Assembly (NCBI RefSeq): GCF_902652985.1
Contig: NC_047033.1
Span: 17,918,001 to 17,982,000, forward strand
Direction of reading: 5' to 3'
DNA: 64,000 bases
Origin: Pecten maximus
Lineage: Eukaryota
How positions within the stretch are numbered: position 1 is the stretch's first letter; every line of letters begins with the position of its first letter. Below the pieces are notes generated by a model. That model had not been told where the DNA came from. It did no database searches and saw only the letters and a program-made list of their open reading frames with translations. Made by a program: the position numbers and the translations under genes. Shown here one piece after another: positions 12,213-61,800 of the stretch.

Positions 12213-12739
12213 CTAGCATGTTCCTCCTCGTCGACTTTTTTTTTCTCCGCGAAAGCATAGTTCCTCATCCTCAGACGATAATTTCGCATCCCTCTCAAAA
12301 CCAATTAATGACTGGATTAGTCCGATATCACTTAGGTTCACTACGTGCTCGTCCAGATTAATCCTTTCATGTGCCATTTGTTGGTGCACAACTATAGCTT
12401 CATCGAGTACGTGAGAACCATGTCTACCCCCAAACCGTTGTTCCGTGTTTGATTTTGAAAGAGGAGTACCTCTACTACCGCTCCCGTCATAAAAGTATCG
12501 TATGAACTAGACGGAATTCTTAGATGTCCATAACTCCGTATTTTCACCACGACTGCCTCCTCATTATCCTCTTTTGATTCAAAATTGACGTTGTCGATTC
12601 CACAAACGATCTTTAACAAAGCCCCCTCCTTGTCGTTTTTGAGATACACTTTGTTGTTCATGGCGGAGTTTCAAATTTCGACATTGTTTGGTGCAAGTGT
12701 ACGAACACACGTTTTCTCATATGGATCACTCTCTGTACC
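12213..12739 (-). pseudogene. Disabled terminal exon of an unidentified gene
   Basis: Acceptor ttttgtag|GGT at 12739. Frame GTESDPYEKTCVRTLAPNNVEI* (TGA 12673-12671) continues in frame into ORF 12392..12661, then apparently frameshifts to EAIVVHQQ...GGTC*. No family recognised. Confidence 0.35.
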
Positions 12740-13874
12740 CTACAAAACAAAATCAAAAATATTCGTTTACGATGCCTGGTTTCAAAATTGATTCTACAAG
12801 ATTGCCTCGTAAGCTTCTGGTAAATCTTGATTTGAACTGTTAGAATTAAAACTCAAAAAGTAATGAAATGGATCCAAAGATAAATCAAATACGAAGTTGA
12901 TCATACACGTTTGTTTAGACGAATTAAGATAACATTACCTACCTTTATATTAATATATATTAAACGTAACACATTGTACAGGGTACAATGTATCGGTGTT
13001 ATAACTGAACATGCTCACAACTTACGTTGCTCCAATCTGACATTTTCCGACAAGGTAAAACTTACTTTGCCTTGACGGACACTCGACCTTGATGTTTTTT
13101 GGGCCCAAGATGCCGTTTAAATTTGATTTAGGCAATACCTAATCTTGGCAGTTTCATGGCGCATGACTTCTGCTTTCGGTGTTGTATGTTAACACATATG
13201 ATACTTGTTTAAAACAATTCATCTCTGCATATTGCCTAAAAACAATTTTAATCTAAGTACATAGATAGCATTGCACACAAAGCCGTTAGTGATTAAAGGG
13301 GTATGTGACTTGTATAATTAAAGTAGCACCTTTGTGAAAACAGGCATCTTTCAACAAACTGTATACATTGAACGTGTTGAAGTCGATTTATTTCAGACAT
13401 TCAACAATAAAATAATACTTGAGAGATAACACAACCCTGTCACATGATTTTATTTTGATCATTCAAGGTTTGGCAATGTTTGGGCCACGGCTTATAATTT
13501 AGCAAACATCAACTGTGTTTGGTTGGTTACCATTTACTCGGGCAGCCAACAGATAACTGACAAATTGGTTGGTATGCTACCAACAGATAATTATTAACAA
13601 AATCGGTTGGTTACCAACTAGTTCACCAACAAATAATTTGCCTTTGCACCTGTTTTTCACAAATAAAGTTTAGTTCAATGCAGTGTTTCCAGTTCAAAAT
13701 TTCTCAAGATTGGTCGGTTACCAACTAGGGTACCAACAGATAACTTGCACAGTTGTCGCCAAATAAAGTTAAGCTCAATTTCACAGTTTACATTTCCAAT
13801 ACTTGTGTTCAGATGAGATGACAAACCGTAAATTACATTACTTTAAAATGTTTCAACCAAGGCCTGGGTACAGC

Positions 13875-15855: not shown

Positions 15856-16618
15856 CTTCCACTTATCGAAAATCTTATTCTCGAAAGATTGCAAAATTTG
15901 CTATAATCATTTAATCATTTCATTTTTCCGAAATTTTGGCCCCCAGACCCCTCGCCAAAAAAATTCGGCTCCCGCCTATGGCGCTCCCATTACCACATTA
16001 CCACTAAATTACTGACCCCCCCCCCCCCCCCCCCCCCCCCTTTCCAATTCCTGGATCCGCGCCTGCTGTGTACTGTCATATACGGTGCATGGTAATCAAA
16101 CGTTCAAAATAACAAATAATTTATAAATCATCGTTCATCGACGAAACCCTTCAAATAATCGTAACTTAGACGAAACTCTTCAGCGAGCCGAAGCATTTTG
16201 CGGACAAAATGCATGCGGAGATGACCCCCAAAAGTACACCTGACGACTGACGATCATATAATCGCATGACCCTTGAACCCCGTATGTAAATGAAGAATCT
16301 GGACAGGCTCAGGGAGCCGTTTGAGAAATGGCGTTCTGAGCGAGGAATTCGGCGATGTTTTCACGGATTATTGTGTTTTGGATGTAACAATTCATATTGA
16401 GTGGCACGGTAGGTTAAAGATGAATGTTTTCTGATGACGGTCGCATATAGTGTGCGCCGTGTCAGTTTGAATAAATGTGTTTTTTAGCCGGTTGAAGTGA
16501 GATGGGGTGCCGTTTCGCTCGTGGCGTAGTTGCCAACCTTCAGGTTAACAGATTACACATACCGCTGTCATATCAAAAAAAAATCGAAAGTGATATTTTC
16601 TATATGCAAGCGCCTGTG
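13875..16618. mobile_element. Non-autonomous DNA transposon with ~400-bp TIRs and 8-bp TSD (hAT/P-like)
   Basis: CACAGGCGCTTGCATATAG... mirrored at the right end. About 360 bp essentially identical, then ~40 bp imperfect. TSD GGTACAGC at 13867-13874 and 16619-16626. No transposase ORF. Confidence 0.9.
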
Positions 16619-17447
16619 GGTACAGCACCTCAGTTATGAACATAATAATGTTAGACAACCGAAGCCTGCATGGGAGCAGGACTTCAGTAAATTAACTTCA
16701 GTTTGTCCTCGTACAAGTTAATATATTAAATTAAGATGGTGTTGTGGATTGAAATGAGATCGAGATGAAGATATCCTGGCGCCCCTACCCACGTGTCTAC
16801 GGGAAATAACTCATGGCATATAGAAGTATAGTACTACCTGGGACATCGTACAAAGGGGAATAACTCGTATACTTTTAATGCTAATCCTATGGAAAAAGAA
16901 TCCAACCGATTGCTGCTATAAATAAAAAAACATGTATGGATGTACTTTGACATACATAAATGAAGTTAATTACAATGGTCGTTGTGTTATTTTAATCTAA
17001 GTTTAATTACGTCTGCCCATATTTTGCAGCCATCAAATTTCCTGAACTGTGATCATGAGTAAACGCGCGATTCTACGGTCGATATTTTGAGATGAAGTAA
17101 TTTTCAATAAACTTGGTTAGTGTAGGTTGCATGAGTTGATGCAGTCACGGCTTCAACAAACCTTCAACTCAGGTTCTTGGTATTGGACACTGATATTATC
17201 AATGGATATGCAGAGTCGAGATGAACATGCAGATTTTTTTTAACACTAATGTATAGATGATTTTTATTAATCTATACAAAAGATGCACAAGATAGTAGCA
17301 CCTTTCATCAAAAGTTAAGAGTATGACACAGTAGATGAAAAAATAAATTGCTTCATATATCTGTTGCACATATAGTAAAGAGGTAAACTTCGTTTTATTT
17401 GCTTCCCCAACGTAGATATCTTATCTATTTATAGCGTATATAGTGGA

Positions 17448-18742: not shown

Positions 18743-18960
18743 GGTTTGTTTGCTTGTATTGTTTAACGTTTTATCATAATCTATGGTCATTAAAGATGAA
18801 TATCTCCGGTATATATGATGCATGAGTATAGTGTGAGTGTTTTGAGTGGCTGCTGCAAGATTGTATTTTCTTGTTATAGCGCGGAACTGTTGCTGACTTT
18901 ATAGTGCTACCTCACTGAACCATACCGAAGACAACAACATGCAGGACACCAACCCGGCTA
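18743..18960 (-). mobile_element. Degenerate SINE (MetaSINE-like core, (aaac)n tail)
   Basis: ggtttgtttg...tttaacg tail and tatagtgctacctcactgaa core resembling the Meta domain. Confidence 0.4.
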
Positions 18961-21299
18961 TCCTCTAAATGCAGTTGATATAGTCTAAATACATTCAATT
19001 GTTATTGGATAATATTATCATATCAATCTAGTCTACAGTCAGAAACACTGACCAGATATTTTGAATTTTACTGTGTAAGGACGTAAAAAAAGAGTTCACA
19101 AGGATTGTACAATACCAATGTTCAATTCAAATTCAGAACAAGATCCAGCATATGGAAAATTGAATGCATCGCACCGCTCGAATCTATGCTAGGAACCTTA
19201 AGAGTAACTACCTAAAAGGTGACATTGGAAACTAAATTTTTTACAGATCGAAAGAAATGTCAAAATCCTAAGTTGCAGTTAAATAAATGTCGTAAATTGC
19301 AGTATTGAATTTCAAACAAAGCCAATGAGTATATTTTGCACTGTTGCAGGGTTGTCTGGAATATGCAATCTCAAAAGACTACCAAACAAAAATACTCACA
19401 AGATGAAAACTCTTTCGATTACTCTTGTTCCATAACGCGACCTCCGTCGTCCTTCCATCTATCGGCTACGAAAATGCAAACCAAATTTTGCAAACATTGT
19501 GACTCCTCCTCCCCTCCCCTTCCCCCACATGGTGCAGGAGAGACAGGACCCAATATAGAAAAAAGAGGTTATACCTTAAATATTTGAAAAAGGGAAACAC
19601 ATTTTTGCATACTGCTCACTCATTTAAATCTATACACGTCATGAACGACTGGGTTGAATTTTATCCGATTTGGCCAGAAGCAAGTTTGAGGGCCGTAGAA
19701 CTTAATTTTCGTAAATGGTGGCTCTGACCATCCTTGCAGGGCCCTTTGAAAGCGGGGCTTAATAGGGTTAACAAAGATAGGTCATTCAAATAATAGAATC
19801 ATGAAGTCATCGGGGAGGAAATGGAGTTTGTCTAAATGTGGTCAAAATCATCCCTGGGTAAAACGGAACATGCATAAATGGTTAACTGGTAATTAATGTT
19901 CAGTAAAGTAATTTACAAACAATGTAAGATTTTACCTGAAAACCAACTCACAATTTTGTTTTTGTTACGGTACTGAACAATGGAGCTTCTAAGACCTTTG
20001 AGAACAGAACCAGCATGCATATGCATATTTAGGTACATAATTGACATAATCAGATAGAAATATATTAATAAACTGATATGTTCTTAATTCTACTCTCTAT
20101 TGTTGGTTTTTTATGATTTCGCGTTACTAGCCTCTTCAAATTCTCACAATATGGTATTATTTTGTTATTTCGTACATCTAATAATACAATATCCGTGACA
20201 AATGTCAAGTGCTGAAAATATTTGCAACAGATTGAAGAAGGCGTTAGATTTGACCAAGTTTATAATAATATTTCGTCTTCATTTGTTTTCAAGTCTAACA
20301 CTAATTCAAGCATGTATATAGTATACCTAGGTCGTGAACAATTTCAATCCACAAAAAATACCCACTGGAGCTTATTTCTATAAGCCGGTTTAAACAGTAG
20401 GTATGAATTACCGCGGCTAGCAAATGCATCTCCTTTCCGTGCAACGCCCTTGACCTTCACATTTACTCCATTAATAAATGTAATGTAATTCAGCTTCAAA
20501 GGCATTTCACATTCCTTCATTCGTTCAACTATGATTTAATCGTTTCGGGTATCATCGCCGGCGTATTGGTGTGAAATGTCTACCTCTATGTCACAAAACT
20601 GTTTCGATAGGAAACTTTACGTTACTAGAAGAGAATTTTGCGACATGTCCTCATATTTTTTCTATGTTCTGTATATTGAAAAATCCAAGCATAAAGTCAA
20701 GTTCTGACATCATACATCTGAAACATAAATACACCTTGTACACTGCAATCATTAGTTATTTCCATATGGTAATTCGGATACTTACCTCATGTTACATTTT
20801 TTTTACATAAAGAAATTAATATATACTGTATATTTTCAATATTCTGATCCGCAGCATCAGTAATGACATTTTATCAAAAACAATATAAATGTTTATGCAC
20901 GGTTCTCAAAAACGATTTTGACATTGGCAATAAATATTCAATCAATAAATATAGTTTTAATACATCTATTTGAATTCAAAGTATTCAGTTTACAATCGAT
21001 GAACAGGAAAATACATACTTGAAACCTAATTATTTAAAAGCGTTTTAAGACGCATAATCCTGATCTAATGATGACTGCGATATGAACATAAACTTTCCAT
21101 GGTCGAACACCTACTCTTTGAACATGGGCCTTATCACAACTCTGTGGTATGCTTTAATCAAAGTTTTTTGTTTGTTTTTTTACTTTAGGAATAAATTCCA
21201 CCCTAGACATTACTCTGTAAAATAAAAACAAAAAGTATATGTGTATAAAATAAATCTGCATTTTATCTTCGAACTTCGTAGTATAAATCTTGGTAAAAC

Positions 21300-29102: not shown

Positions 29103-29272
29103 NNNNNNNNNNNNNNNNNNNNNNNNNNNNNNNNNNNNNNNNNNNNNNNNNNNNNNNNNNNNNNNNNNNNNNNNNNNNNNNNNNNNNNNNNNNNNNNNNN
29201 NNNNNNNNNNNNNNNNNNNNNNNNNNNNNNNNNNNNNNNNNNNNNNNNNNNNNNNNNNNNNNNNNNNNNNNN
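29103..29272. other. Assembly gap (170 N)
   Basis: Run of n characters. Confidence 1.
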
Positions 29273-48467: not shown

Positions 48468-51400
48468 ATGGATGAAGCGTTAGTACCACTAATTAGCGGT
48501 GAAAATGAAGCCACAGAACAAGCTGAAACTGAAAGCGAAAACGACAGTAGAGGCTTACCAGCTAACAAGGATTTCCATGTCTTTATATCATACAGCTCTA
48601 AAAACGCCGAATTCGTCACAAAATTACACAATTATCTCGAGAGTAGTTTGAATTTCAGGTAAGCTTTCGTACACATTTTTTTATCTTAATCAAACTACGG
48701 AAATATTCTAGCTTGTGAAATATAAACATATGAAAGACTGATGAACAGATATTTACATTTGCGGGTTTAACACCATACAAACGTCGGCTGTGTTACAAGA
48801 AAATAGCATGAACAAGAAGCTAGCGCTGTTCATGTTCACGTTATATTACAAACCCATTATTAAGAATATTTTCGGCGTCAAAGCTTCCTCTTTCTGATTG
48901 TTATTAAGTATTGTTCAAGTCAGGAAATGATTTACCTTTTACAAAATGTGTTGTTAACGTAAGTTGCAGGCGGACTTCTTAACGAGGGTGTTTGTGTCGG
49001 CTTGTCCAAGAGGTGGGGTTCGGCTGCGCGTTACCACTATCGGCGTAGTCCACACCTTTCCAAGCTTTATGCGAACTACAATTGCCATTGTTGGCATAAT
49101 ATACCCGGATATTTATATATATCGAATTCGGTCGTCCTTCACAACAAAAGTAATGTTTTCTCCCAAAAGACATAATTTTAATAATCAGTTATTATTCTTG
49201 CCTTGAAGATATATCTTTTTTGTAAATGAAGCGAATGTAGAAAAATATTCCTTTACTGCAGCACCAAACTATTAACTTAACTATATCTAGTGAATGTTTT
49301 ATTTTATACTTTCAGTTCAAAACATTACAGAAAGTGATAGATTTCGTAGCCAATGCAAAATGACACATAGCCTATGGTTTTCCATCGTGGGTAGCGCGGG
49401 AACTCACAAGAAGGCTGCTTAAAAATAAATTATCTATTAGGCATAAGAATATAATTGAATTGTTTGTTGAAATGTATGAATATAAATACAATAATAAAAA
49501 ATAAAGGCGAATATTCCTACAAATCTATATAGTTTATCCACATTATTTAAACATCAAATAAACACTTATTTACAACTTAATTAGGTGTATGCTGGCTGAT
49601 CATCATTTCACACCCGGAGAACTCGTAATAGACAACATTTCCAACTCGTTCGACCGATGTGAAAAAGTCTTGTTTGTTGTATCGAAGCAGTTTTTGGAAA
49701 GTGGATACTGTGAAAGAGAGGTAGCTGTCGCGTACACATATGCAATGGACAATAGACAGAAAGATTACATGATTGTTCTTAAAATCGACGACAGTCCGTT
49801 AGACAGAAAATTACGCGTCTGTACTTATATTGATGGTGCTAACTGCGACATCGAATCAATCGGACACAGATTTGACACGGCATTTATTGGATCTGGTAAG
49901 ATTGTAATGCTTTTTATGAAAAAAAATGTCTAACTAGTCATAAAAATTATTGTCCGAGGATAAATCCTTTAACGTAAAGCCTGCCCTCCACAGGATCAAC
50001 TTGTTAATTTTATGTCACTGTGTAAAATCACAAAATTCTGATTTTATTTCTGGTATAAAAGCAAACTGAATTCGTGTAAAAACGTTGCCTGACTCTTAAT
50101 TGGATACAAGATCAAAATCTTAATACTACATATGCCAGGAATTCCCTTTGTTCTGATTCGATAAAAACATTTCACATGTAGGTCAATATAAACCATAATG
50201 GTCCCATGTTTCTAAACTAAGAGCAACTGGGCGATATGGACTCCACGTTTATAAAATTCAGACAAGTGGATGTATGAACACCGAAGAAGTACAACTCACT
50301 GTATTTTCATACCATGATGGAAAATGATGACACATTTGTCAAAGATACTTTGTGAAATTCTAATTGAGACATTTTTACTCTCTCAAACTTTAATCAAAAT
50401 AACGAATGATAGAAGTATAATGAGGTATTTGAAACAAATCAAAATATTACCATTGGTTATTCTGTTAAATGACAAAACATTATTTGAATAAAATGACATT
50501 GTTCAAAGACACAAAAAGACATGAACATCCTTTCATGACAAATTGTGAGTTGTGATAATTATACAGCAGAGCCAAAATGAATCAACCTTGCCTTGCAGCT
50601 ATTTTGTCCTTTTAGAACTCGTCAGTTGTGTAATGGGCATCATATAGCTGTTCCGTCCTTTTAGGACTCGTCAGTAATTCTAGGGACATCATAAAGCTTT
50701 TTTGTCTTTCTAGTACTCATCAGTGATACTAGGGACATCATACAACTGTTTTGTCAATCTAGTACTCGTCAGTGATGCCAGGGACATCATACAGCTGTTT
50801 CGTCCTTGGACTCGTCAGTGTGACAAGGAGATGTGACTAACACGTGGTATTTAAATAACACTTTAGTCATGTTTCTCACTTAACATTAACACAAGTAAGG
50901 AACGACGACAATATGTGATATGTCATAACATGTCCGCATTTAAAGATCAGAGAGTCAAGTCAACAGTAATGGAATCAGCAAACAATAAGCTGGTAAATTG
51001 ACATTTATATCAGCAGAAGTCCAATTCACATAGGGTGTCCATATTATATACATTTTTCGGTAGTTGACAAAAAGTAATAAAAAACAAATACTAAAAACCT
51101 TCTGACTCTAATAGAACTGTTTACTTACTAAATAAAACCATACAAAATGAATGAAAAAAAATGAGATCTGCTTACATTGCAATAGATCTTGACGAACCTC
51201 AATATATATATGTGTACTTATCAACCAAAGTAGAAGTCTACTTAGGGGTTTTATAAATAAATTTTCTATAAAGCAAAAGATAAAATAAGGAAAACATTTG
51301 GGCATTTCTACTGTTAATATGTGTATGTGTTTTAGCTTTTAGCTTTAAACGTAAGATGACCGTATTACTATGAATGGGTATTTGTAAAGGGGGCCGCGAT

Positions 51401-54400: not shown

Positions 54401-57400
54401 ATGAAAATATATCAAAATTTATAACGGTATGTTAAATTTTCAAATATAACATTGATTCAACAGAATCTTTTTATATGCTGTAACTCGATGTGACTTTAAA
54501 GAAATAGTCCATTACGACATGTAATGGATTGATATTACCCACTCTAGTTTATGAAAAATTAAAGAGGATTGCATGATAGCCGAAAATAGCATGACAAAAT
54601 GATACGCGTTTTCATATCTTTGTGTACCATAGAAAGTGTATAAATGTACATAAAGATTAGAAAAATCAAGTATTACCAAGATTTAAAAAACTTTACAAAC
54701 CAAACTATTTACTTTAACATGCATTTGGACAAACAACCGATATCATATATCATATTCAAATTATCATATATGTCCGTACCAATGGGTACGAATATATATA
54801 TATATGAAAACTCCTTTTGGCTCTCGGCGATATCCTTCAGGAAATCTAGTAAGGATTGTCCCGCCAGCCTCTCCCGTTACAGATAATCTAGTAAGGAGGG
54901 GGTAACATGTCCCGCCAGCCTCTCCCGCTACAGATAATCTAGTAAGGAGGAGGTAACATGTCCCGCCAGCCTCTCCCGTCACAGTTAATCTAGTAAGGAG
55001 AAGGTAGCATGCCCCGCCAGCCTCTCCCGTTACAGATAATCTAGTAAGGAGGAGGTAACATGTCCCGCCAGCCTCTCCCGTTACAGATAATCTAGTAAGG
55101 AGGAGGTAACATGTCCCGTCACCCTCTCCCGTTACAGCTAATCTAGTAAGGAGGAAGTAACATGTCTCGCCAGCCTCTCCCGTTACAGATAATCTAGTAA
55201 GGAGGAGGTAACATGTCCCGCCAGTCTCTCCCGTTACAGATAATCTAGTAAGGAGGAGGTAACATGTCCCGCCAGCCTCTCCCGTTACAGATAATCTAGT
55301 AAGGAGGGGGTAACATATCCCGCCAGCCTCTCCCGTTATAGATAATCAGTAAGGATGAGGTAACATGTCCCGCCAGCCTCTCCCGTTATAGATAATCTAG
55401 TAAGGAGGAGGTAACATGTCCCGCCAGCCTCTCCCGTTACAGATAATCTAGTAAGGAGGAGGTAACATGTCCCGCCAGGCTCTCCCGTTACAGATAATCT
55501 AGTAGGGAGTAGGTAACATGTCCTGCAAGCCTCTCCCGTTACAGATAATCTAGTAAGGAGGAGGTAACATGTCCCGCCAGCATCTCCCGTTAAGGATAAT
55601 CTAGTAAGGAGGAGGTAACATGTCCCGCCAGCCTCTCCCGTTACAGATAATCTAGTAAGGGGGGGGTAACATATCCCGCCAGCCTCTCCCGTTACAGATA
55701 ATCTAGTAAGGAGGAGGTAACATGTCCCGCCAGTCTCTCCCGTTATAGATAATCAGTAAGGATGAGGTAACATGTCCCGCCAGCCTCTCCCGTTATAGAT
55801 AATCTAGTAAGGAGGAGGTAATATGTCCCACTAGCCTGTCCCGTTACAGATAATCTAGTAAGGAGGAGGTAACATGTCCCGCCAGCCTCTCCCGTTACAG
55901 ATAATCTAGTAAGGAGGGAGGTAACAATATCCCCGTCAGCCGCTCCCGTTATAGATAAATCTAGTAAGGAAGGAAGGTAAATGTCCTCGCCAGCCTCTCC
56001 CGCTACAGATAATCTAGTAAGGAGGAGGTACATGTCCCGCCCAGTCCTCTCCGTTACAGATAATCTAGTAAGGAGGAGGGTAAAACATGTCCCAGCCAGC
56101 CATCTCGCCGTTACAGGATAATCTAGTAAGGAGGAAGGTAACATGTCCTGCCAGCCTCTCCGTTACAGATAATCTAGTAAAGGAGGGAGTAACATAGTCC
56201 CGCCAGCCTCTCCCGTTATAGATAATTCTAGTAAAGATGAGGGTAACATGTCCCGCCAGCCTCTCCCGTTACAGATAATCTAGTAAGGGGGGGGGTAACA
56301 TATCCCGCCAGCCTCTCCCGTTACAGATAGTAAGGAGGAGGTAACATGTCCCGCCAGCCTCTCCCGTTACAGATAATCTAGTAAGGAGGAGGTAACATGT
56401 CCCGCCAGCCTCTCCCGTTACAGATAATCTAGTAAGGAGGAGGTAACATGTCCCGCCAGCTTTCCCGTTACAGATAATCTAGTAAGGAGGGGGTAACATA
56501 TCCCGCCAGCCTCTCCCGTTATAGATAATCTAGTAAGGAGGAGGTAACATGTCCCGCCAGCCTCTCCCGTTACAGATAATCTAGTAAGGAGGGGGTAACA
56601 TATCCCGCCAGCCTCTCCCGTTATAGATAATCTAGTAAGGAGTAGGTAACATGTCCCGCCAGCCTCTCCCGTTACAGCTCGTATCATTTAGTAGTACTAA
56701 CATAAGTATTTTGTACTGCGTGTTTCGCAGCTACATATACATGTCTATGTGTGTCTATTACAGATGAATTCCGATATTCAATAATACAACAGATTTTATT
56801 CATAATAACATTTATTGTCATGAAAATATAAATGTAACAAATATGCACAATAGCTGTATAATCGTAATCACAAATGAAAAAGAAACAGATTATACATAAC
56901 CTTGCGCCAAGCACACGCAGACGTACAGATAAACTGTCATGTTCAGTAATGGATACCTACAAAATTTTGAGTTTGTATTATAGCAAAGCAAAATAAAAAG
57001 AAAAAAACAATTAGACTACAATCAGAATAGTTGGTAAGAAACGTGTTTATGTTGTTATCAGACGCGTTATAAGAGGGATTTTAAAACATTTGCTATATTT
57101 CCATTATCAAGCACTGTCCCTCAGGGCAAGCGTTTTTAGGAAAAGTTGACATATGAATGGGCGACGGAAAAAATTGTCCTGTCGTGGCCACAAAAGCATG
57201 TTTCATTGTCCTTCCGTTTTGTTTCCCCGTCCTAGCTGTCATGTAGTAATCACAATATTGACTGTGAGGATAATAAGAATATTAGAATATTGTCAAAATC
57301 TCTGGTATTTGACTCTAATTATCGACGTAAACATGTTTTAAATCCTAAACGATATCCGATATTAATTATCAATGCCAATCATTTGCTTTGCTTTTAGAGA

Positions 57401-58059
57401 AGGTGCGAATCGCTATTCGAAGCCATTATAATGTGGAGATATCATGAAAACTACTTGTGCATCCAAGAAACATACAGTCCAAGGCATCCGATGATGGTAT
57501 TAGAGAGGTGCTTATGTCAACTCTTAGAGGAGCTAGATATAAACAAAAAGGAAAGAGAAAAAGTGGTGAGGTGATAATGGAGGTCATATTATTCAAATCG
57601 TGCAAAGTATCCATCCGCTCATATATGGAAAGACGGAGCAACTCCTATATTAATAAACAAATTTGATACATGAATGCAAACTTACAATTATAAAATCCAA
57701 CACAAATTCATCTAAAATATACCACACTACACAGTTTTTAACAGACAAAACACAGAACCAAATATCATTGAATAAACTACATGTACGTTAAATTATAAAT
57801 ATATTGTTTCATTTTATTATTCATTCATATTTGTCTTTTTAAAAGTTTGGTTTTTGAGTGATACAATACATCTTTCTAATTTTTTGCCTAAATAAACATC
57901 TAAAATCGGCCATGTTTGCATGCATGTTAAAAATGATGTACTGAAACTTGTATTTTTTCGGTTTAACAGGAAACCCAAAATATAAGGACTGATGATGAAG
58001 AAACTTGTGTAATGGAAATTGTAGGAACGGAATCTTCCGAAGATACGATGTGTACATGA
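48468..58059 (+). CDS. TIR-domain protein with two TM helices and a TMEM268/DUF4481-like C-terminal region (439 or 466 aa)
   Basis: Exons 48468-48658, 49585-49895, 51747-51901, 52341-52631, 53008-53112, 53676-53711, 54317-54370 and 57398-57574 (stop); or donor after 57565 plus exon 57970-58059. All GT-AG, in phase. TIR motifs FHVFISYS, CMLADHHFTPG, VLFVVSKQFLESGYCERE. C-terminal IVFIYYDIAPCWNYFKEHV and RHPMMVLERCLCQLLEE. Confidence 0.85.
50594..50826 (-). ncRNA. Tandem array of five 49-nt minimal hammerhead-ribozyme units (one with intact core)
   Basis: Units at 50594, 50643, 50692, 50741, 50790. Minus-strand consensus CAUCA-CUGACGA-GUCC-UAGAA-GGAC-GAAAC-AGCU-GUA-UGAUG. Unit 50818-50790 has exact CUGACGA...GAAA...GUA. 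Confidence 0.75.
51389..51610 (+). mobile_element. tRNA-derived V-domain SINE
   Basis: A box tggccgagtggttaagg, B box gagttcgaaac, V-like core ggtggtttttctccgggcactccggctttcctccac, (aaac)n tail, TSD TTGTAAA (51382-51388, 51611-51617). Confidence 0.85.
54843..56677. repeat. 51-bp minisatellite, ~36 copies, in intron 7 of the TIR gene
   Basis: Unit aatctagtaaggaggaggtaacatgtcccgccagcctctcccgttacagat. Period confirmed (54886 to 54937). Confidence 0.97.
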
Positions 58060-58316
58060 GGAAGTTTTGCCGCGACAAGCGACAGTCAAGGACACAGTAA
58101 TGATGTCATACAACCAGCTTATATGCACTCAGCCGTTCACTTATAGTGAAACCTATGTCCAATCTAGTCCTTGCCATGATACTTGTCCAATAATTCTGTA
58201 AACGAGCTGATTTTGGCTGACAAAAACAATTGTGAATAGGAAACACAAGATAGTAGCATATTCAAACTAAACTGGGAGCTAGACACAGTAGAGCTAAAAT
58301 GACTGCAACTTCACCA

Positions 58317-58895
58317 TACAGCTGTTTTGTCCTTCTGTGACTCGTCCGTGGTGTTAGGGACACTATACAGTTGTTTAGTACTTCTGGGACTCATTAGTGA
58401 TGTTAGGGGCACTACACAGTTGTGTAGTACTTTTGGGACTCGTCAGTGATGTTAGGGGCACTATACAGTTGTTTAGTACTTCTGGGACTCGTCAGTGATG
58501 TTAAGGACACTATACAGTTGTTTAGTACTTCTGGGACTCGTTAGTGATGTTAGGGGCATCATACAGTTGTGTAGTACTTTTGGGACTCGTCAGTGATGTT
58601 AGGGGCACTACACAGTTGTGTAGTACTTTTGGGACTCGTCAGTGATGTTAGGGGCACTATACAGTTGTTTAGTACTTCTGGGACACGTTAGTGATGTTAG
58701 GGACATTATACAGTTGTTTAGTACTTCTGGGACTCGTTAGTGATGTTAGGGGCACTATACAGTTGTTTAGTACTTCTGGGACACGTTAGTGATGATAGGG
58801 ACATCATACAGTTGTGTAGTACTTCTGGGACTCGTCCATGATGCTAGGGACATCATACAGTTGTTTAGTCATTCTAAGACTCATAATTGATGTTA
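58317..58895 (-). repeat. 49-bp minisatellite (~12 copies) derived from the same hammerhead unit, catalytic GAAA lost
   Basis: Units every 49 bp from 58317 to 58856. Minus strand CATCA-CTGACGA-GTCC-CAGAA-GTAC-TAAAC-AACT-GTA. Confidence 0.9.
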
Positions 58896-61800
58896 CATGT
58901 CTAAGTGTTGGCGAGAGGAGGCGACTTAAAATAAAACTCGAAATATATTTAAAGAAATGCCAAAATCTTGATAGGGAGCTGAAAAATATTTCACATTATC
59001 TAATCATGTATTCATTAGGAACAGTGAACAAAAACTAACTAACACAGTATCTAACAGAGAAATGTCAAACCGCTAACATATATGGATGTATACATATGTG
59101 TCCTGTCCAGCAGGAGTAAAGACTATACTATTCTACACATGTCCAACCACCTAATGGTAGCAACCTATAATAAGTATATGCCACTGATAAAATGTCGCCC
59201 GATTCCGAACTCTGCAGATATTGCCATTCTACTGCGTTTTAGAAATTTCAGGTAGATTCAACAGGCATCTATTTAATAGTTCTCCAATATGGTAGTCTCA
59301 TTTTGAATCGTCAAGATGCAAACGTTATCAACAAGTATTCAAGGATAATTGCTTAATTTGTACATTTGAAATAAGGTTTCACAAATCAAGTGGTTTAAAA
59401 GCATTAACACTTTAGAGAAAAATCCACTTTAATTTCATATTTTTCAATTTGCTCTGCTTTGTCATTATATAACTTCATTAAGCAAATTAGAAAGTGATCA
59501 GATCATGATATATATATATTATATGATTCCCATTGATGTAGCAACATGAAGAACAATGCTCTAACGTCGTGTCTAAATGACGTCGCTGCCTCAGATCACT
59601 ATATTAAGTGTATTTTTGACGTCACGAAAATGCGTGCTACCGGATTGAAAATCTCGATTGAACACTAACTCACACACATTTGTGTAGATACATTGTATGT
59701 TGCATAGAAAGTTAAATGAAATTGATGGGTTTTTTTTGTTTTTTTTCCACGAACTTTATTTTTTGCCGGGACCGGTCGCGTGTTTTCTTGACGTCACAAG
59801 AATAAGCTATTGTCCTATATATTTTTCACACGATTATAGACAAATGCGCGTTATTCAATTGGTCTCCAATCCTTGTGAGAATTATAGGACAATGGCGTTC
59901 CAAAGAAGGCAGTTTGATGCTTAAATATTAACATTTGATTTCGTAGTACGTTGTTAGGACAGCGTCATACTTGTGCTATATGTCTTAATGGCATTTGTTT
60001 TATTTTAAATGTAATCATACTTAGTTTTTACCTATCAATGGGTTATTTTAAAATATTAGTATTACAAACTTCCAAATCGTTTCCAGTTTTATTACTAAAT
60101 GTACATGTATATTAATACAGAATTTTAAGTTCCAGTGTGATATATCTTTTTATGCTCTACATGACCATAGACATTGGAGGGCTTGTAAAATCTATTAATC
60201 AATTATATGATTCACGATGTAACAATACAGTGGTCACGTGATCAAAATACGTACAGCTTATTTCTACATCACAAAGTGATGATGGCAATTGATTTAATGG
60301 TAAATTTGATTTTGTTCATCGTTATTCTGGGATAGAAATGTTAGGTTAACAATCGTTAATTAACCGAGGAACTGAAATCATTGGTAAAATTAATTGACGA
60401 GAAGAAATTTAACGATCGTGAAATAGATTTTTTTAAAGACATTTTCCTATCATATTTATGGGACGCGTGGAGATGTCACCGTTGTGTGCACATGTCAATA
60501 TCTGAAACATAATATGATTATGAGCGGATTTACATATCTACACATGCATTGTACAACCCCAGACTAATTATGTGTAATGTTTGCGGGCAACATCTTTATA
60601 TGCAATGTATATAAATCAAACTAGACATTACGATCGTTTCTTTAATAACGAAAAACAATCATGTTTGAATTCATCATGCAATAACATACAAACTCTCAAA
60701 ATATGGTAACTGAAGCAAATTGCATAGTTAGGAAATAGAAAACGTAGCAGTTCCCCAATACCTGTAACCTACGGTGAGCCATTTACGTCACTATGATACA
60801 GTTGTGGGTGTACAGAAGCGCGTGCAAGTGTATCGCAAATGAAAAAAAAGTGTATCGCAAATGAATTTCTCAATTGAAATTACGAAAAAGAAAAAAGAAA
60901 TAGGCATATTAGTGTCGTAGCATTTTGAAATTTTAGGTAAACTGCTAGTTACATTTTATATAAACGCAAAAAGGAAATAATAAAACAGATCATGCACAAT
61001 GTTCCTTTTTCGTTACTATTTTCCTGGACGAATATGCTGACAAAAATAAGTGTTTTAAAGCCTGCTAAACTTGAACTTATACAACACAAACTATAATTGT
61101 GACATACGCACCATTCTGTACATTTGTCAATCAGATTGATCCACAGGGACCAGTGTCAACTAATCTGCGATATAAACATATAAGAAAATACATACTCGAT
61201 AAATCTTAAAAAAATTGATCCCACAACCGCTGTCCATCTAAACAGGGACATATAATAAGACACTATATGATCACGGACTAAGTCTGTGAGGTATATTACG
61301 ACTCTATGTATCACAGGACACATGAACAATATAGATATAAAATAAAACAAAAGCTTACATCGGACACCTATATAATTGTAAACGTACATATTTTAGGGGT
61401 GATCTTACATTAAAGCATTGCACTAGTATTATGATAGTACTAATTGCACTGTATGTATATTGTTTCTACATTTATACTGTAGATAAGCCAATTCCTTGAT
61501 GCACTAAAGTTTGAATGCGCCAAAATATAAATGTTTACATCAATAAGTCTATGATTACATTTGAATAAACTAATGATTTTACTATAACTACAAAAATGTA
61601 CGATAAACATCATAAATGTGCACAAATAATCAGTTATATCAATATAATTAAAATCATATCTCTCCTTACCCTTTGTAACCTAACAAACACAGGTGAAATA
61701 TGAGAGATTATTAATAGAAATTAAATTGATCAAACTCAGAAGTCTTCTTAAAAAGCTAATACATTATACAAAAACATTGTAATTTGAAGCGATGAGATTA

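What the first reader, a model, noticed from the sequence alone, without database searches (positions are those of the whole stretch)
48468..58059. TIR domain fused to a two-TM TMEM268-like module: candidate undescribed membrane immune effector/adaptor
Seen: 8-9 in-phase exons give an N-terminal TIR, a TM hairpin (CGMSLGCLAFILSILFFVYW / LYWIIGTLVALPVGICICLGIFG), then IVFIYYDIAPCWNYFKEHV and RH-x7-CLCQLLEE. From memory these match the conserved TMEM268/DUF4481 motifs (FIYFD..C and RH...C.CQ..E). No signal peptide, LRR or death domain, so it is not a TLR, IL-1R or MyD88. The TIR keeps the glutamate (GYCERE) at the position catalytic in SARM1/plant/bacterial NADase TIRs. Inference: a membrane-anchored, possibly enzymatic TIR, analogous in logic to the TIR-STING fusions known from oysters but with a different partner domain.
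Basis: partly seen in the sequence, partly recalled or inferred. Interest (0 to 1): 0.8.

Follow-up and report, generated by a model that had tools for sequence, protein, structure and literature searches.

The report
Scallop TIR fused to TMEM268-like anchor
A real, transcribed scallop gene joins a Toll-receptor-type TIR signalling domain to a two-helix membrane module that is probably a distant relative of TMEM268. I found no paper describing this combination, and it most likely acts as a membrane-anchored immune signalling adaptor rather than as an enzyme.

Summary
Window 48468-58059 (+) is a nine-coding-exon gene of 458 codons, with canonical GT/AG sites, all in phase.

- **Transcript:** Spliced contigs in two public runs join exons 1-4, so the TIR and the TM hairpin sit on one transcript. 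Exons 5-9 rest on collinear homology to the Mizuhopecten yessoensis orthologue (P0002, 470 aa) and on contig-length arithmetic.
- **TIR:** Exons 1-2 give a Pfam-supported TIR.
- **TMEM268 likeness:** This is supported but below the curated threshold.
  - Pfam DUF4481 gives 22.8 bits (cut-off 25) for the Argopecten homologue and 10.5 bits for P0002.
  - In the protein atlas, the top three language-model neighbours of both proteins are all DUF4481/TMEM268 clusters.
  - The atlas model of P0002 has TM-score 0.53 to a TMEM268 cluster.
  - There is a weak match of the RH..CxCQ motif to a DUF4481 exon elsewhere in this genome.
- **Enzyme idea:** Not supported. The nearest solved TIRs are TLR2/6/1/10, and SARM1 does not appear even at E 1. 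The retained glutamate is equally conserved in those non-enzymatic TLR TIRs.
- **Family:** It is small. There are three scallop species, a divergent paralogue on contig C556 and a decayed TIR fragment in the window.

Most likely function is an N-in/C-in membrane-anchored TIR adaptor. This is a new variant of a known kind, of moderate interest. The scan holds no earlier TMEM268 note.

The parts
48468..48658 (+). Coding exon 1: start codon, acidic N-terminus and the start of the TIR (DFHVFISYSS, from about 48573). The exon itself begins at 48462, after an upstream non-coding exon that I could not place.
   Evidence: Pfam TIR_2 E 1e-3 on this exon alone. The spliced contig starts 36 nt upstream of an AG acceptor at 48460-48461. 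50% identity to P0002 residues 1-64.
49585..49895 (+). Coding exon 2: the main part of the TIR. The BB-loop Pro-Gly is at 49613-49618 (HHFTPGE). The conserved Glu of GYCEREV is at 49718-49720.
   Evidence: Pfam TIR_2 6.3e-9 and TIR 3.5e-7, both above cut-off. PDB best hit is TLR2 at 5.2e-7. Junction to e1 and e3 is shown in the spliced contigs.
51747..51901 (+). Coding exon 3: linker with the conserved GGMEYVFPDLSE.EM..LR block. The Argopecten protein model P0001 begins in this block.
   Evidence: Junctions on both sides are in the spliced contigs. The donor is AG|GTATAT at 51901/51902, not the downstream GT at 51949. 59-69% identity to P0002.
52341..52631 (+). Coding exon 4: pre-TM segment (DSATCY..LLSRYAMIS), TM1 at 52452-52511, an 8-residue loop GNGSLQVY, TM2 at 52536-52604, then the basic stretch KWQTRIERK.
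   Evidence: Hydropathy scan. Basic residues flank both helices on the N- and C-terminal sides, which implies an N-in/C-in hairpin (read from the sequence). The e3|e4 junction is in the spliced contigs. The only hits in 1.84e9 representatives are P0001 and P0002.
53008..53088 (+). Coding exon 5: INGGLRSISLANMNFKNKYLLLPRMKN.
   Evidence: It has an AG/GT frame with phase 0 to 0. 55% identity to P0002 312-340. Family HMM E 0.01; this exon was not in the training rows. No read shows its junctions directly.
53676..53711 (+). Coding exon 6: a 36-nt micro-exon, IVFIYYDIAPCW. This is the FIYYD..C motif.
   Evidence: It has a CAG| acceptor and a |GTAAGT donor. It is conserved in P0001, P0002 and the C556 paralogue (VKISFIYYDMRECL).
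54317..54370 (+). Coding exon 7: NYFKEHVEWSDTSEEYIN.
   Evidence: It has a TTTAG| acceptor and a |GTAAGT donor. 72% identity to P0002. The unlaid tails of the spliced contigs (141 nt in X1, 170 nt in X2) equal e5+e6 plus 24 or 53 nt of e7; this is arithmetic, not an alignment.
57398..57565 (+). Coding exon 8: RRCESLF...PRHPMMVLERCLCQLLEE. The RH..CxCQ..E motif is at 57482-57532. Cys, His, Cys and Cys are conserved.
   Evidence: Splice sites are. 39% identity to P0002 378-434. HMM E 4.6e-10; this exon was not in the training rows. The motif aligns with the DUF4481 exon L001.
57970..58059 (+). Coding exon 9: acidic tail DDEETCVMEIVGTESSEDTMCT, then the stop codon.
   Evidence: The acceptor is TTTAACAG|. 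50% identity to P0002 436-463. The motif is tandemly repeated about 8 times in P0001.
20404..21089 (-). Decayed copy (stops and a frame break) of the family's two TIR exons, closest to the C556 paralogue.
   Evidence: tblastn of the C556 exons against the window: e2-like E 9e-22 at 41% identity with in-frame stops, and e1-like E 0.004.

Best explanation
This is an expressed, single-copy scallop gene for a 458-residue membrane protein.

**Layout.** An acidic N-terminus is followed by a TLR1/2/6/10-type TIR domain and a conserved linker. Then comes a tight two-helix membrane hairpin, followed by a Cys/His-bearing cytosolic domain and an acidic tail. The part from the linker to the tail is most likely a fast-evolving remote homologue of the DUF4481/TMEM268 module.

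**Topology (inferred).** Basic residues flank the hairpin on both sides, so the TIR and the C-terminal domain both face the cytosol.

**Function (inferred).** It is a membrane-resident TIR adaptor or scaffold. The TMEM268-like module fixes the TIR at a membrane. By analogy with vertebrate TMEM268, which binds integrin tails through residues 104-342, the module may also bind the cytoplasmic tail of a receptor. The TIR would then recruit or compete for MyD88-type or TLR TIRs through BB-loop-mediated TIR-TIR contacts.

**Shown here:** the gene structure, transcription of e1-e4 as one RNA, the TIR identity and its nearest relatives, and the two TM helices.

**Inferred:** the homology to TMEM268, the topology, and the adaptor role.
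For: - **Gene and transcript:**
- **TIR identity:** the TIR is above the Pfam cut-off. The nearest solved structures are TLR2 at 5e-7 with the window's own exon and 1.3e-10 with the orthologue, then TLR6/1/10, then SIGIRR, TLR5, MyD88 and TLR3. The BB-loop Pro-Gly is kept (HHFTPGE against TLR2 RDFIPGK).
- **TM hairpin:**. The helices at 217-276 and 283-326 are the only confident part of the model.
- **DUF4481 likeness:**
  - Pfam gives 22.8 bits, E 6.7e-5, for P0001 77-204 on profile positions 67-194. It gives 10.5 bits for P0002 266-375 on profile positions 69-186.
  - The atlas feature neighbours ranked 1-3 are all DUF4481 for both proteins, scoring 0.85-0.90 with 182-201 of 256 shared features.
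  - The atlas structure search gives TM 0.53 over 182 residues to a TMEM268 cluster.
  - hhalign places PRHP..C.CQ on QRHTNHTFCLCQ of a DUF4481 exon at E 0.0065-0.0097. That exon ranks first of 137 ORFs, with z about 3.7.
- **Human TMEM268:** it has the same two adjacent TM helices (residues 104-126 and 130-152) inside DUF4481, and it binds ITGB4 through residues 104-342 (PMC6748091). The mouse knockout has an anti-infection defect through CD11b (PMC11169502).
Against: - No family member reaches Pfam's curated cut-off for DUF4481, and the window's exons scanned one by one give no DUF4481 hit.
- TM-rich sequences attract spurious profile matches. EMP70 scores E 8.5e-4 on e4.
- The hhalign score barely exceeds the best control (22.3 against 21.8).
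- The atlas structure search with P0001 found nothing.
- My AlphaFold model is poor, with pLDDT 47.5.
- I could not obtain any TMEM268 sequence set for a profile-profile test.
- The adaptor role rests on analogy only. No partner, localisation or immune-regulated expression is shown.
- The junctions of e5-e9 are not directly read, and unspliced contigs over introns 5-6 leave room for a truncated isoform.
Confidence: 0.55

Rival explanations
1. Enzymatic membrane effector. On clustering in the membrane, the TIR cleaves NAD+ or makes a nucleotide signal, as in SARM1, plant TIRs or bacterial TIR-STING. The TMEM268-like module would serve as the oligomerisation platform.
For: - The Glu at the catalytic position is kept (GYCEREV), also in P0002 and the C556 paralogue.
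- Pfam TIR_2 scores higher than TIR (74.7 against 34.4 bits).
- There are faint matches to CAP12/Pycsar TIR and Cat1.
Against: - The same Glu is more than 90% conserved in the TLR1/2/6/10 subgroup, which has no reported NADase activity. Among metazoan TIRs only SARM1 is a known NADase (PMC7075850).
- SARM1 is absent from the PDB hits even at E 1, and oyster TIR-STING scores only E 0.52.
- The closest TIRs are signalling scaffolds.
Confidence: 0.15
2. Membrane-tethered decoy or negative regulator. The TIR sequesters MyD88 or TLR TIRs without passing a signal on, as SIGIRR or TIR-only inhibitors do.
For: - There is no death domain, kinase or other output domain.
- SIGIRR is among the PDB hits at 8.9e-5.
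- The architecture gives the TIR no ligand-sensing part.
Against: - No feature separates an activating from an inhibiting TIR here.
- The conserved Cys/His C-terminal domain and the repeated acidic tail suggest further partners.
Confidence: 0.2
3. The C-terminal half is not related to TMEM268. It would be a lineage-specific two-TM module, and the resemblance would come from hydrophobic composition and a short chance motif.
For: - All sequence evidence is below curated or conventional thresholds.
- Other TM families score similarly on e4.
- A feature score under 0.9 is rated 'a lead only' by the tool.
Against: - Out of 7.7 million clusters, the top three neighbours of two proteins about 42% identical to each other are all DUF4481.
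- The Pfam matches of both proteins fall on the same profile stretch in register with the TM hairpin.
- A structural hit agrees, and so does a motif match outside the TM region.
Confidence: 0.2
4. Annotation artefact: two neighbouring genes (a TIR gene and a TM gene), or a pseudogene, merged by eye.
For: - P0001 from Argopecten is modelled without a TIR.
- Introns 5-6 carry unspliced contigs.
Against: - Spliced contigs in two runs join e1-e4 with no mismatches.
- All frames are open and in phase.
- The orthologue P0002 and the C556 paralogue have the same exon order, TIR to TM to FIYYD.
Confidence: 0.03

Closest known systems
TMEM268 (C9orf91; Pfam DUF4481, PF14800) of vertebrates and arthropods
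   Same: - Two adjacent TM helices form a tight hairpin, flanked by a cytosolic N-terminal segment and a cytosolic C-terminal domain of about 150 residues.
- There is an FIYYD..C-type block after the hairpin and an RH..CxCQ..E block near the C-terminus.
- It is the nearest neighbour by Pfam, by language-model features and by the atlas structure search.
   Different: - Scores are below the curated cut-off.
- A TIR domain of about 165 residues and an acidic leader are added at the N-terminus.
- An acidic EETC-repeat tail is added at the C-terminus.
- TMEM268 itself has no TIR, and its known role is stabilising integrins (ITGB4, CD11b).
TIR domains of TLR2/TLR1/TLR6/TLR10 (subgroup 3.2 of Toshchakov & Neuwald 2020)
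   Same: - They are the best solved matches (E 1e-10 to 3e-8 with P0002, 5e-7 with the window's exon 2).
- They share the box-1 F/Y-[IV]-SYS, the BB-loop xFxPG and the C-x-x-E-[LV] Glu.
   Different: - A TLR has a signal peptide, an LRR ectodomain and a single TM helix, with the TIR at the C-terminus.
- Here the TIR is N-terminal, there is no ectodomain, and the anchor is a hairpin.
- UniProt's automatic name 'Toll-like receptor 1' for P0002 is therefore misleading.
Membrane-targeted TIR sorting adaptors (TIRAP/Mal, TRAM)
   Same: They are proteins with a cytosolic TIR and no ligand-binding part that are held at membranes so as to bridge receptors and MyD88/TRIF. This is the proposed working analogy.
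   Different: - From established knowledge, they attach through a PIP2-binding motif or through myristoylation, not an integral hairpin.
- TIRAP is only a non-significant PDB hit (E 0.21).
Metazoan (oyster) TIR-STING fusion, PDB 6WT6/6WT7
   Same: It follows the same evolutionary logic: a bivalve TIR joined to a membrane-associated signalling module.
   Different: - The partner domain is different (STING, a cyclic-dinucleotide receptor).
- Its TIR is not close to this one (E 0.52).
SARM1
   Same: It is a metazoan TIR protein that keeps the conserved Glu, and it is Pfam TIR_2 type.
   Different: - This gene has no ARM or SAM domains.
- SARM1 is not among the PDB matches even at E 1.
- Nothing points to an NAD-pocket signature here.

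Membership tests
TIR domain (Pfam PF13676 TIR_2 / PF01582 TIR) | Profile match above the curated cut-off | tested here: met
   Window exon 2 alone gives TIR_2 36.8 bits (cut-off 28) and TIR 30.6 bits (cut-off 21.3). The orthologue P0002 gives TIR_2 74.7 bits, E 1.1e-20.
TIR domain (Pfam PF13676 TIR_2 / PF01582 TIR) | Box 1 (F/Y-x-[IV]-SYS), the BB-loop Pro-Gly, and the conserved Glu between betaC and betaD | tested here: met
   DFHVFISYSS, HHFTPGE and GYCEREV align with TLR2 YDAFVSYSE, RDFIPGK and WCKYEL.
DUF4481 / TMEM268 (Pfam PF14800) | Profile match at or above the curated cut-off of 25 bits | tested here: not met
P0001 gives 22.8 bits (E 6.7e-5) and P0002 gives 10.5 bits (E 0.38). The window exons scanned singly give no hit.
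DUF4481 / TMEM268 (Pfam PF14800) | Two adjacent TM helices (a hairpin) inside the domain, with both termini cytosolic | tested here: met
   TM1 is at 52452-52511 and TM2 at 52536-52604, separated by 8 residues and flanked by basic residues. Human TMEM268 has TM helices at 104-126 and 130-152 within DUF4481 38-328 (PMC6748091). The Pfam alignment puts the hairpin on profile positions 67-115 or so.
DUF4481 / TMEM268 (Pfam PF14800) | C-terminal RH..CxCQ..E block | tested here: inconclusive
   The block is present in the window (PRHPMMVLERCLCQLLEE), in P0001 and in P0002. It is also present in a Pfam-supported DUF4481 exon of this genome (QRHTNHTFCLCQFIE, profile positions 249-293). hhalign gives E 0.0065, probability 5.8%, rank 1 of 137, but only 0.5 score units above the best control.
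DUF4481 / TMEM268 (Pfam PF14800) | Same fold as TMEM268 | tested here: inconclusive
   The atlas model of P0002 195-440 gives TM 0.53 over 182 residues to a TMEM268 cluster. The atlas model of P0001 gives nothing. My own AF2 model is too poor to search. No AlphaFold DB library was available.
Toll-like receptor | Signal peptide, LRR ectodomain and single TM helix, with the TIR C-terminal to the TM helix | tested here: not met
   The N-terminus is acidic with no hydrophobic leader (sequence). Pfam finds no LRR in P0002. The TIR precedes the TM helices.
MyD88 / IL-1R family | Death domain (MyD88) or Ig ectodomains (IL-1R) | tested here: not met
   Pfam finds no such domain in P0002 or P0001 at E<=10.
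SARM1-type / NADase TIR | Closest relatives are NADase TIRs, and the catalytic Glu lies in an NAD pocket | tested here: not met
   The Glu is present but not diagnostic (PMC7075850). SARM1 is not among the PDB matches at E<=1, and the best matches are TLR2/6/1/10. Enzyme activity cannot be tested with these tools.

The most novel reading that the evidence does not exclude
This is a 'Rosetta-stone' reading. The fusion would record an ancestral functional link between the TMEM268 module and TIR signalling. On this reading TMEM268-type hairpin proteins are membrane scaffolds that couple adhesion receptors (integrin tails) to Toll-pathway adaptors. The anti-infection defect of Tmem268-knockout mice would then reflect a conserved immune-signalling role. 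The conserved Cys..Cys..His..CxC set in the C-terminal domain would be a metal-binding interaction surface. The atlas lists a 54-member mollusc cluster carrying a TIR and the same C-terminal fold (TM 0.70). That suggests the architecture is widespread in molluscs rather than a scallop oddity.
Probability: 0.15. Interest if true: 0.75.

Novelty: new variant of a known kind. Interest (0 to 1): 0.5.

Why it matters
TIR adaptors decide where and how Toll-type signals start. Bivalves have the largest and least understood set of them.

A TIR welded to an integral TMEM268-like hairpin would be a new way of placing a TIR at a membrane. The known ways are lipid binding (TIRAP), myristoylation (TRAM) and a receptor's own helix (TLR).

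The fusion also gives the first testable clue to what the poorly understood TMEM268/DUF4481 module does. A domain fusion predicts that the two parts work in one pathway. That fits the immune phenotype of Tmem268-knockout mice.

The caveat is that bivalves shuffle TIR domains freely, so one more combination is not in itself a great surprise.

Tried and rejected
**Searches that found little**
- The three word-index protein searches (P0002 C-terminal region, family alignment A3, whole P0002) found only P0001 and P0002. They missed even the known homologue once, so a blank there says nothing.
- The Pfam PF14800 six-frame scan of the genome gave no hit in the window. It gave one credible DUF4481 terminal exon on C4.
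- Rfam at gathering threshold over 47000-59500 found nothing.
- Papers: no paper holds both TMEM268 and 'TIR domain'. Gerdol et al. 2017 is not held.

**The C4 locus**
- I tried to rebuild that C4 gene to obtain real TMEM268 exons for a profile-profile test. I used a family HMM, tblastn, a hydropathy filter and a Pfam scan of 10 ORFs. No further DUF4481 exon was found.
- The other weak PF14800 or e4 hits (L002-L004, L006) are noise. The A5-based HMM collapsed to 87 positions and was discarded.

**Structure**
- The AlphaFold2 model of P0002 from a 7-row alignment was poor (pLDDT 47.5). I ran no fold search on it, because low-confidence models give meaningless matches.

**Other checks**
- Pairwise BLASTP of e8 against the DUF4481 exon was not significant.
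- A retrocopy as the source of the spliced contig is rejected, because e2, e4 and e8 are unique in the genome.
- The alternative e3 donor at 51949 with an acceptor at 52385 is in phase, but the contigs refute it.

**Steps not taken**
- Exons were searched singly by reference, and the orthologue P0002 served as the full-length proxy.
- No complex prediction was run, because the report does not claim that any particular pair of proteins binds.


Full report
**1. What is in the sequence**

Between 48468 and 58059 on the + strand lie nine open, in-phase coding exons with canonical GT..AG borders:
- e1 48468-48658
- e2 49585-49895
- e3 51747-51901
- e4 52341-52631
- e5 53008-53088
- e6 53676-53711
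- e7 54317-54370
- e8 57398-57565
- e9 57970-58059

The lengths sum to 1377 nt, which is 458 codons plus the stop. The split codons are AG|G (Arg) at e1/e2 and G|GT (Gly) at e2/e3.

The genome (G000, 918,306,378 bases in 3983 contigs, window on C19) is a scallop. The nearest proteins come from Mizuhopecten yessoensis and Argopecten irradians. Another note of this scan calls it the king scallop.

**2. Is it one transcript?**

Logan contigs of two runs were laid on 48400-54399. Each run holds one contig (1133 nt in X1, 1051 nt in X2, with 0-1 mismatches). Each contig joins 48460-48656 | 49583-49894 | 51746-51899 | 52339-52629. After allowing for the 1-2 ambiguous bases at each joint, this is e1|e2|e3|e4.

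This decided between two in-phase models for e3/e4. The donor is AG|GTATAT at 51901/51902 and the acceptor is at 52340/52341.

The contigs also carry 36 nt upstream of an AG acceptor at 48460-48461. There is therefore at least one non-coding 5' exon that I could not place.

The unlaid 3' tails of the contigs are 141 and 170 nt. These lengths equal e5 (81) + e6 (36) plus 24 or 53 nt of e7. That is consistent with the model, but it is arithmetic and not an alignment.

Exons e2, e4 and e8 occur only once in the genome. A processed retrocopy therefore cannot explain the spliced contig. The runs' kind is only guessed as RNA, but a spliced form with no DNA copy in the genome implies RNA.

Introns 1-4 have no coverage. 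Introns 5 and 6 carry unspliced contigs at roughly half the depth (53133-53556 and 53682-54345). This could be intron retention, an alternative end or an overlapping transcript, and it remains unresolved.

**3. Relatives**

A full HMMER scan of 1.84 billion representatives with exon 4 (97 aa) found two proteins only.
- P0002 is 470 aa, from M. yessoensis LOC110461612. NCBI calls it uncharacterized, and UniProt's automatic name is 'Toll-like receptor 1'.
- P0001 is 344 aa, an uncharacterized protein from A. irradians. Its model starts inside the e3-equivalent and has no TIR.

tblastn of P0002 on the window aligns all nine exons in order. Identity was about 39-61% per exon by tblastn, and 83% and 72% for the short e6 and e7 in the MAFFT rows. 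That alignment revealed e5 and e9.

A family HMM then hit all nine window exons collinearly. This includes e1, e5, e8 and e9, which were not in its training rows.

Within the same genome there is a divergent paralogue on the unplaced 24.8-kb contig C556. It has the same exon order and the same intron position inside the TIR:
- e1-like at 12495-12776
- e2-like at 16152-16541 (37% identity)
- e3-like at 16679-16957
- a TM-hairpin exon at 17118-17390 with good splice sites
- e5-like at 18860 onward
- a micro-exon VKISFIYYDMRECL at 19165-19206

After that the contig runs into a reverse-transcriptase fragment and a minisatellite.

The window itself carries a decayed copy of the two TIR exons at 20404-21089 (-).

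**4. The TIR**

Pfam TIR_2 and TIR both pass their cut-offs on exon 2 alone. On the orthologue they score strongly (TIR_2 E 1.1e-20).

Against all solved structures, the window's own exon 2 is closest to TLR2 (5.2e-7), then TLR15/2, TLR6, TLR1 and TLR10. TLR5, TLR3, TIRAP, MyD88 and SIGIRR follow at non-significant levels. Oyster TIR-STING scores E 0.52, and SARM1 is not listed even at E 1. P0002 gives the same order.

The BB-loop Pro-Gly is kept (HHFTPGE against TLR2 RDFIPGK). The Glu in GYCEREV aligns with the Glu in TLR2 WCKYEL.

Toshchakov and Neuwald (PMC7075850) make three relevant points:
- This Glu is conserved in more than 70% of all TIRs.
- It is conserved in more than 90% of the TLR1/2/6/10 subgroup, so it does not track enzymatic activity.
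- Among metazoan TIRs, only SARM1 is a known NADase.

It does not point to catalysis. The domain looks like a signalling TIR.

**5. The membrane module**

Exon 4 encodes two hydrophobic helices, CGMSLGCLAFILSILFFVYW and LYWIIGTLVALPVGICICLGIFG. They are separated by 8 residues (GNGSLQVY). Basic residues precede the first (SERRKQ) and follow the second (KWQTRIERK). By the positive-inside rule (established knowledge) both ends are cytosolic, which suits a TIR.

**6. Is it TMEM268-like?**

- *Pfam.* P0001 matches DUF4481 at E 6.7e-5 and 22.8 bits, against a cut-off of 25. Residues 77-204 fall on profile positions 67-194. P0002 matches the same profile stretch at E 0.38.
- *Language-model features.* Among 7.7 million atlas clusters, the three nearest to P0002 195-440 are all DUF4481/TMEM268 clusters (0.87, 0.86 and 0.85, with 186, 184 and 182 shared features). 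The same holds for P0001 (0.90, 0.89 and 0.88, with 201, 197 and 192 shared features). The tool states that 170 or more shared features is typical of true family members.
- *Structure.* The atlas's own model of P0002 has TM 0.53 over 182 residues to a TMEM268 cluster. It has TM 0.70 over 236 residues to a 54-member mollusc cluster in which 98% of members carry a TIR. That cluster may be P0002's own.
- *Motif.* The only credible DUF4481 exon elsewhere in this genome is at C4:32515788-32515916 (-), with Pfam 22.8 bits on profile positions 249-293. It reads ..ERMCVML..QRHTNHTFCLCQFIE. hhalign of the family alignment places PRHP..C.CQ on it at E 0.0065-0.0097. It ranked first of 137 ORFs of similar length, with z about 3.7, but only 0.5 units above the best control.

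Against this:
- No score reaches a curated threshold.
- Single window exons give no DUF4481 hit.
- Other TM families score comparably on e4 (EMP70, E 8.5e-4).
- P0001's atlas model gave no structural hit.
- My AlphaFold model was too poor to use (pLDDT 47.5).

I put remote homology at about 0.75-0.8. I describe the module as TMEM268-like, but I do not file it as a member by Pfam's criterion.

**7. How it probably works**

Human TMEM268 has the same two adjacent helices (104-126 and 130-152) inside DUF4481. It binds the integrin beta4 tail through residues 104-342 and protects that integrin from degradation (PMC6748091). Mouse Tmem268 stabilises CD11b, and its loss weakens anti-bacterial defence (PMC11169502).

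Taken together, the most likely reading is as follows. The module anchors a TLR-type TIR at a membrane. The hairpin and C-terminal domain provide localisation and perhaps a receptor-tail contact. The TIR engages MyD88-type or TLR TIRs.

The protein could activate, as a sorting adaptor like TIRAP or TRAM does, or it could dampen, as a decoy like SIGIRR does. The data do not separate these two.

The C-terminal domain keeps a Cys (PCW), a Cys (RRC), a His (RHP) and a CxC in all members. These might bind a metal, which is speculation. The tail motif EETC.M[EK][IV].G[ST]E is single in the window and repeated about eight times in Argopecten.

**8. Novelty**

No paper in the searchable library holds both TMEM268 and 'TIR domain'. 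The reviews I could read describe bivalve cytosolic TIR proteins as largely uncharacterised. I could not read the main catalogue (Gerdol et al. 2017), so one of its unnamed families may coincide with this one. The scan's own notes hold no TMEM268 finding.

The gene products are already in public databases as uncharacterised or mis-named proteins.

I rate it a new variant of a known kind: a TIR adaptor with a new membrane partner. Interest is moderate. The Rosetta-stone link to TMEM268 is attractive, but bivalves combine TIR domains with many partners.

**9. Limits**

- P0002 served as the proxy.
- The N run at 29103-29272 was left alone.

Noticed in passing
window 20404-21089 (-): A decayed copy of the family's two TIR exons, with in-frame stops and a frame break. 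It is closest to the C556 paralogue (e2-like E 9e-22, 41% identity). No TM exon was found downstream of it.
   Followed up: partly
G000 contig C556:12495-19224 (+) (L015, L016): A divergent paralogue with the same TIR, TM-hairpin and FIYYD exon order, and intact splice sites. The 24.8-kb contig then ends in a reverse-transcriptase fragment and a minisatellite with 25-aa-period ORFs, so the 3' exons are unknown.
   Followed up: partly
G000 C4:32515788-32515916 (-) and C4:32538167-32538829 (-) (L001, L010): The first is the only credible DUF4481 C-terminal exon in the genome (Pfam 22.8 bits). A complete single-exon TIR_2 ORF (E 4.9e-10) lies 22 kb upstream on the same strand. Whether they belong to one gene is unknown, because no linking exons were found.
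   Followed up: partly
window about 51390-51610 (intron 2): A dispersed repeat with enormous summed contig depth in all four runs (up to about 1e6) and many sequence variants. The same ORF-like string occurs on C4. It is probably a highly transcribed SINE-like element. Rfam gives no match at gathering.
   Followed up: no
window 53133-54345 (introns 5-6): Unspliced contigs at about half the depth of the spliced mRNA contig, while introns 1-4 are empty. This could be intron retention, an alternative 3' end that would truncate the protein after e5/e6, or an overlapping transcript.
   Followed up: no
window 54764-56687 (intron 7): A minisatellite of about 1.9 kb, GC-richer than its surroundings (0.42). 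It gives long repetitive ORFs (TGEAGGTCYLLLTRLSV) on the - strand.
   Followed up: no
Contigs show 'goes back' joints typical of tandem repeats at 50764-50820. Rfam at gathering threshold found no hammerhead or any other family in 47000-59500.
   Followed up: partly
P0001 residues about 255-340; P0002 453-463; window 57994-58035: The acidic Cys-containing tail motif EETC.M[EK][IV].G[ST]E varies in copy number between scallop species. The window has 1 copy, Mizuhopecten has 1-2, and Argopecten has about 8 in tandem.
   Followed up: no
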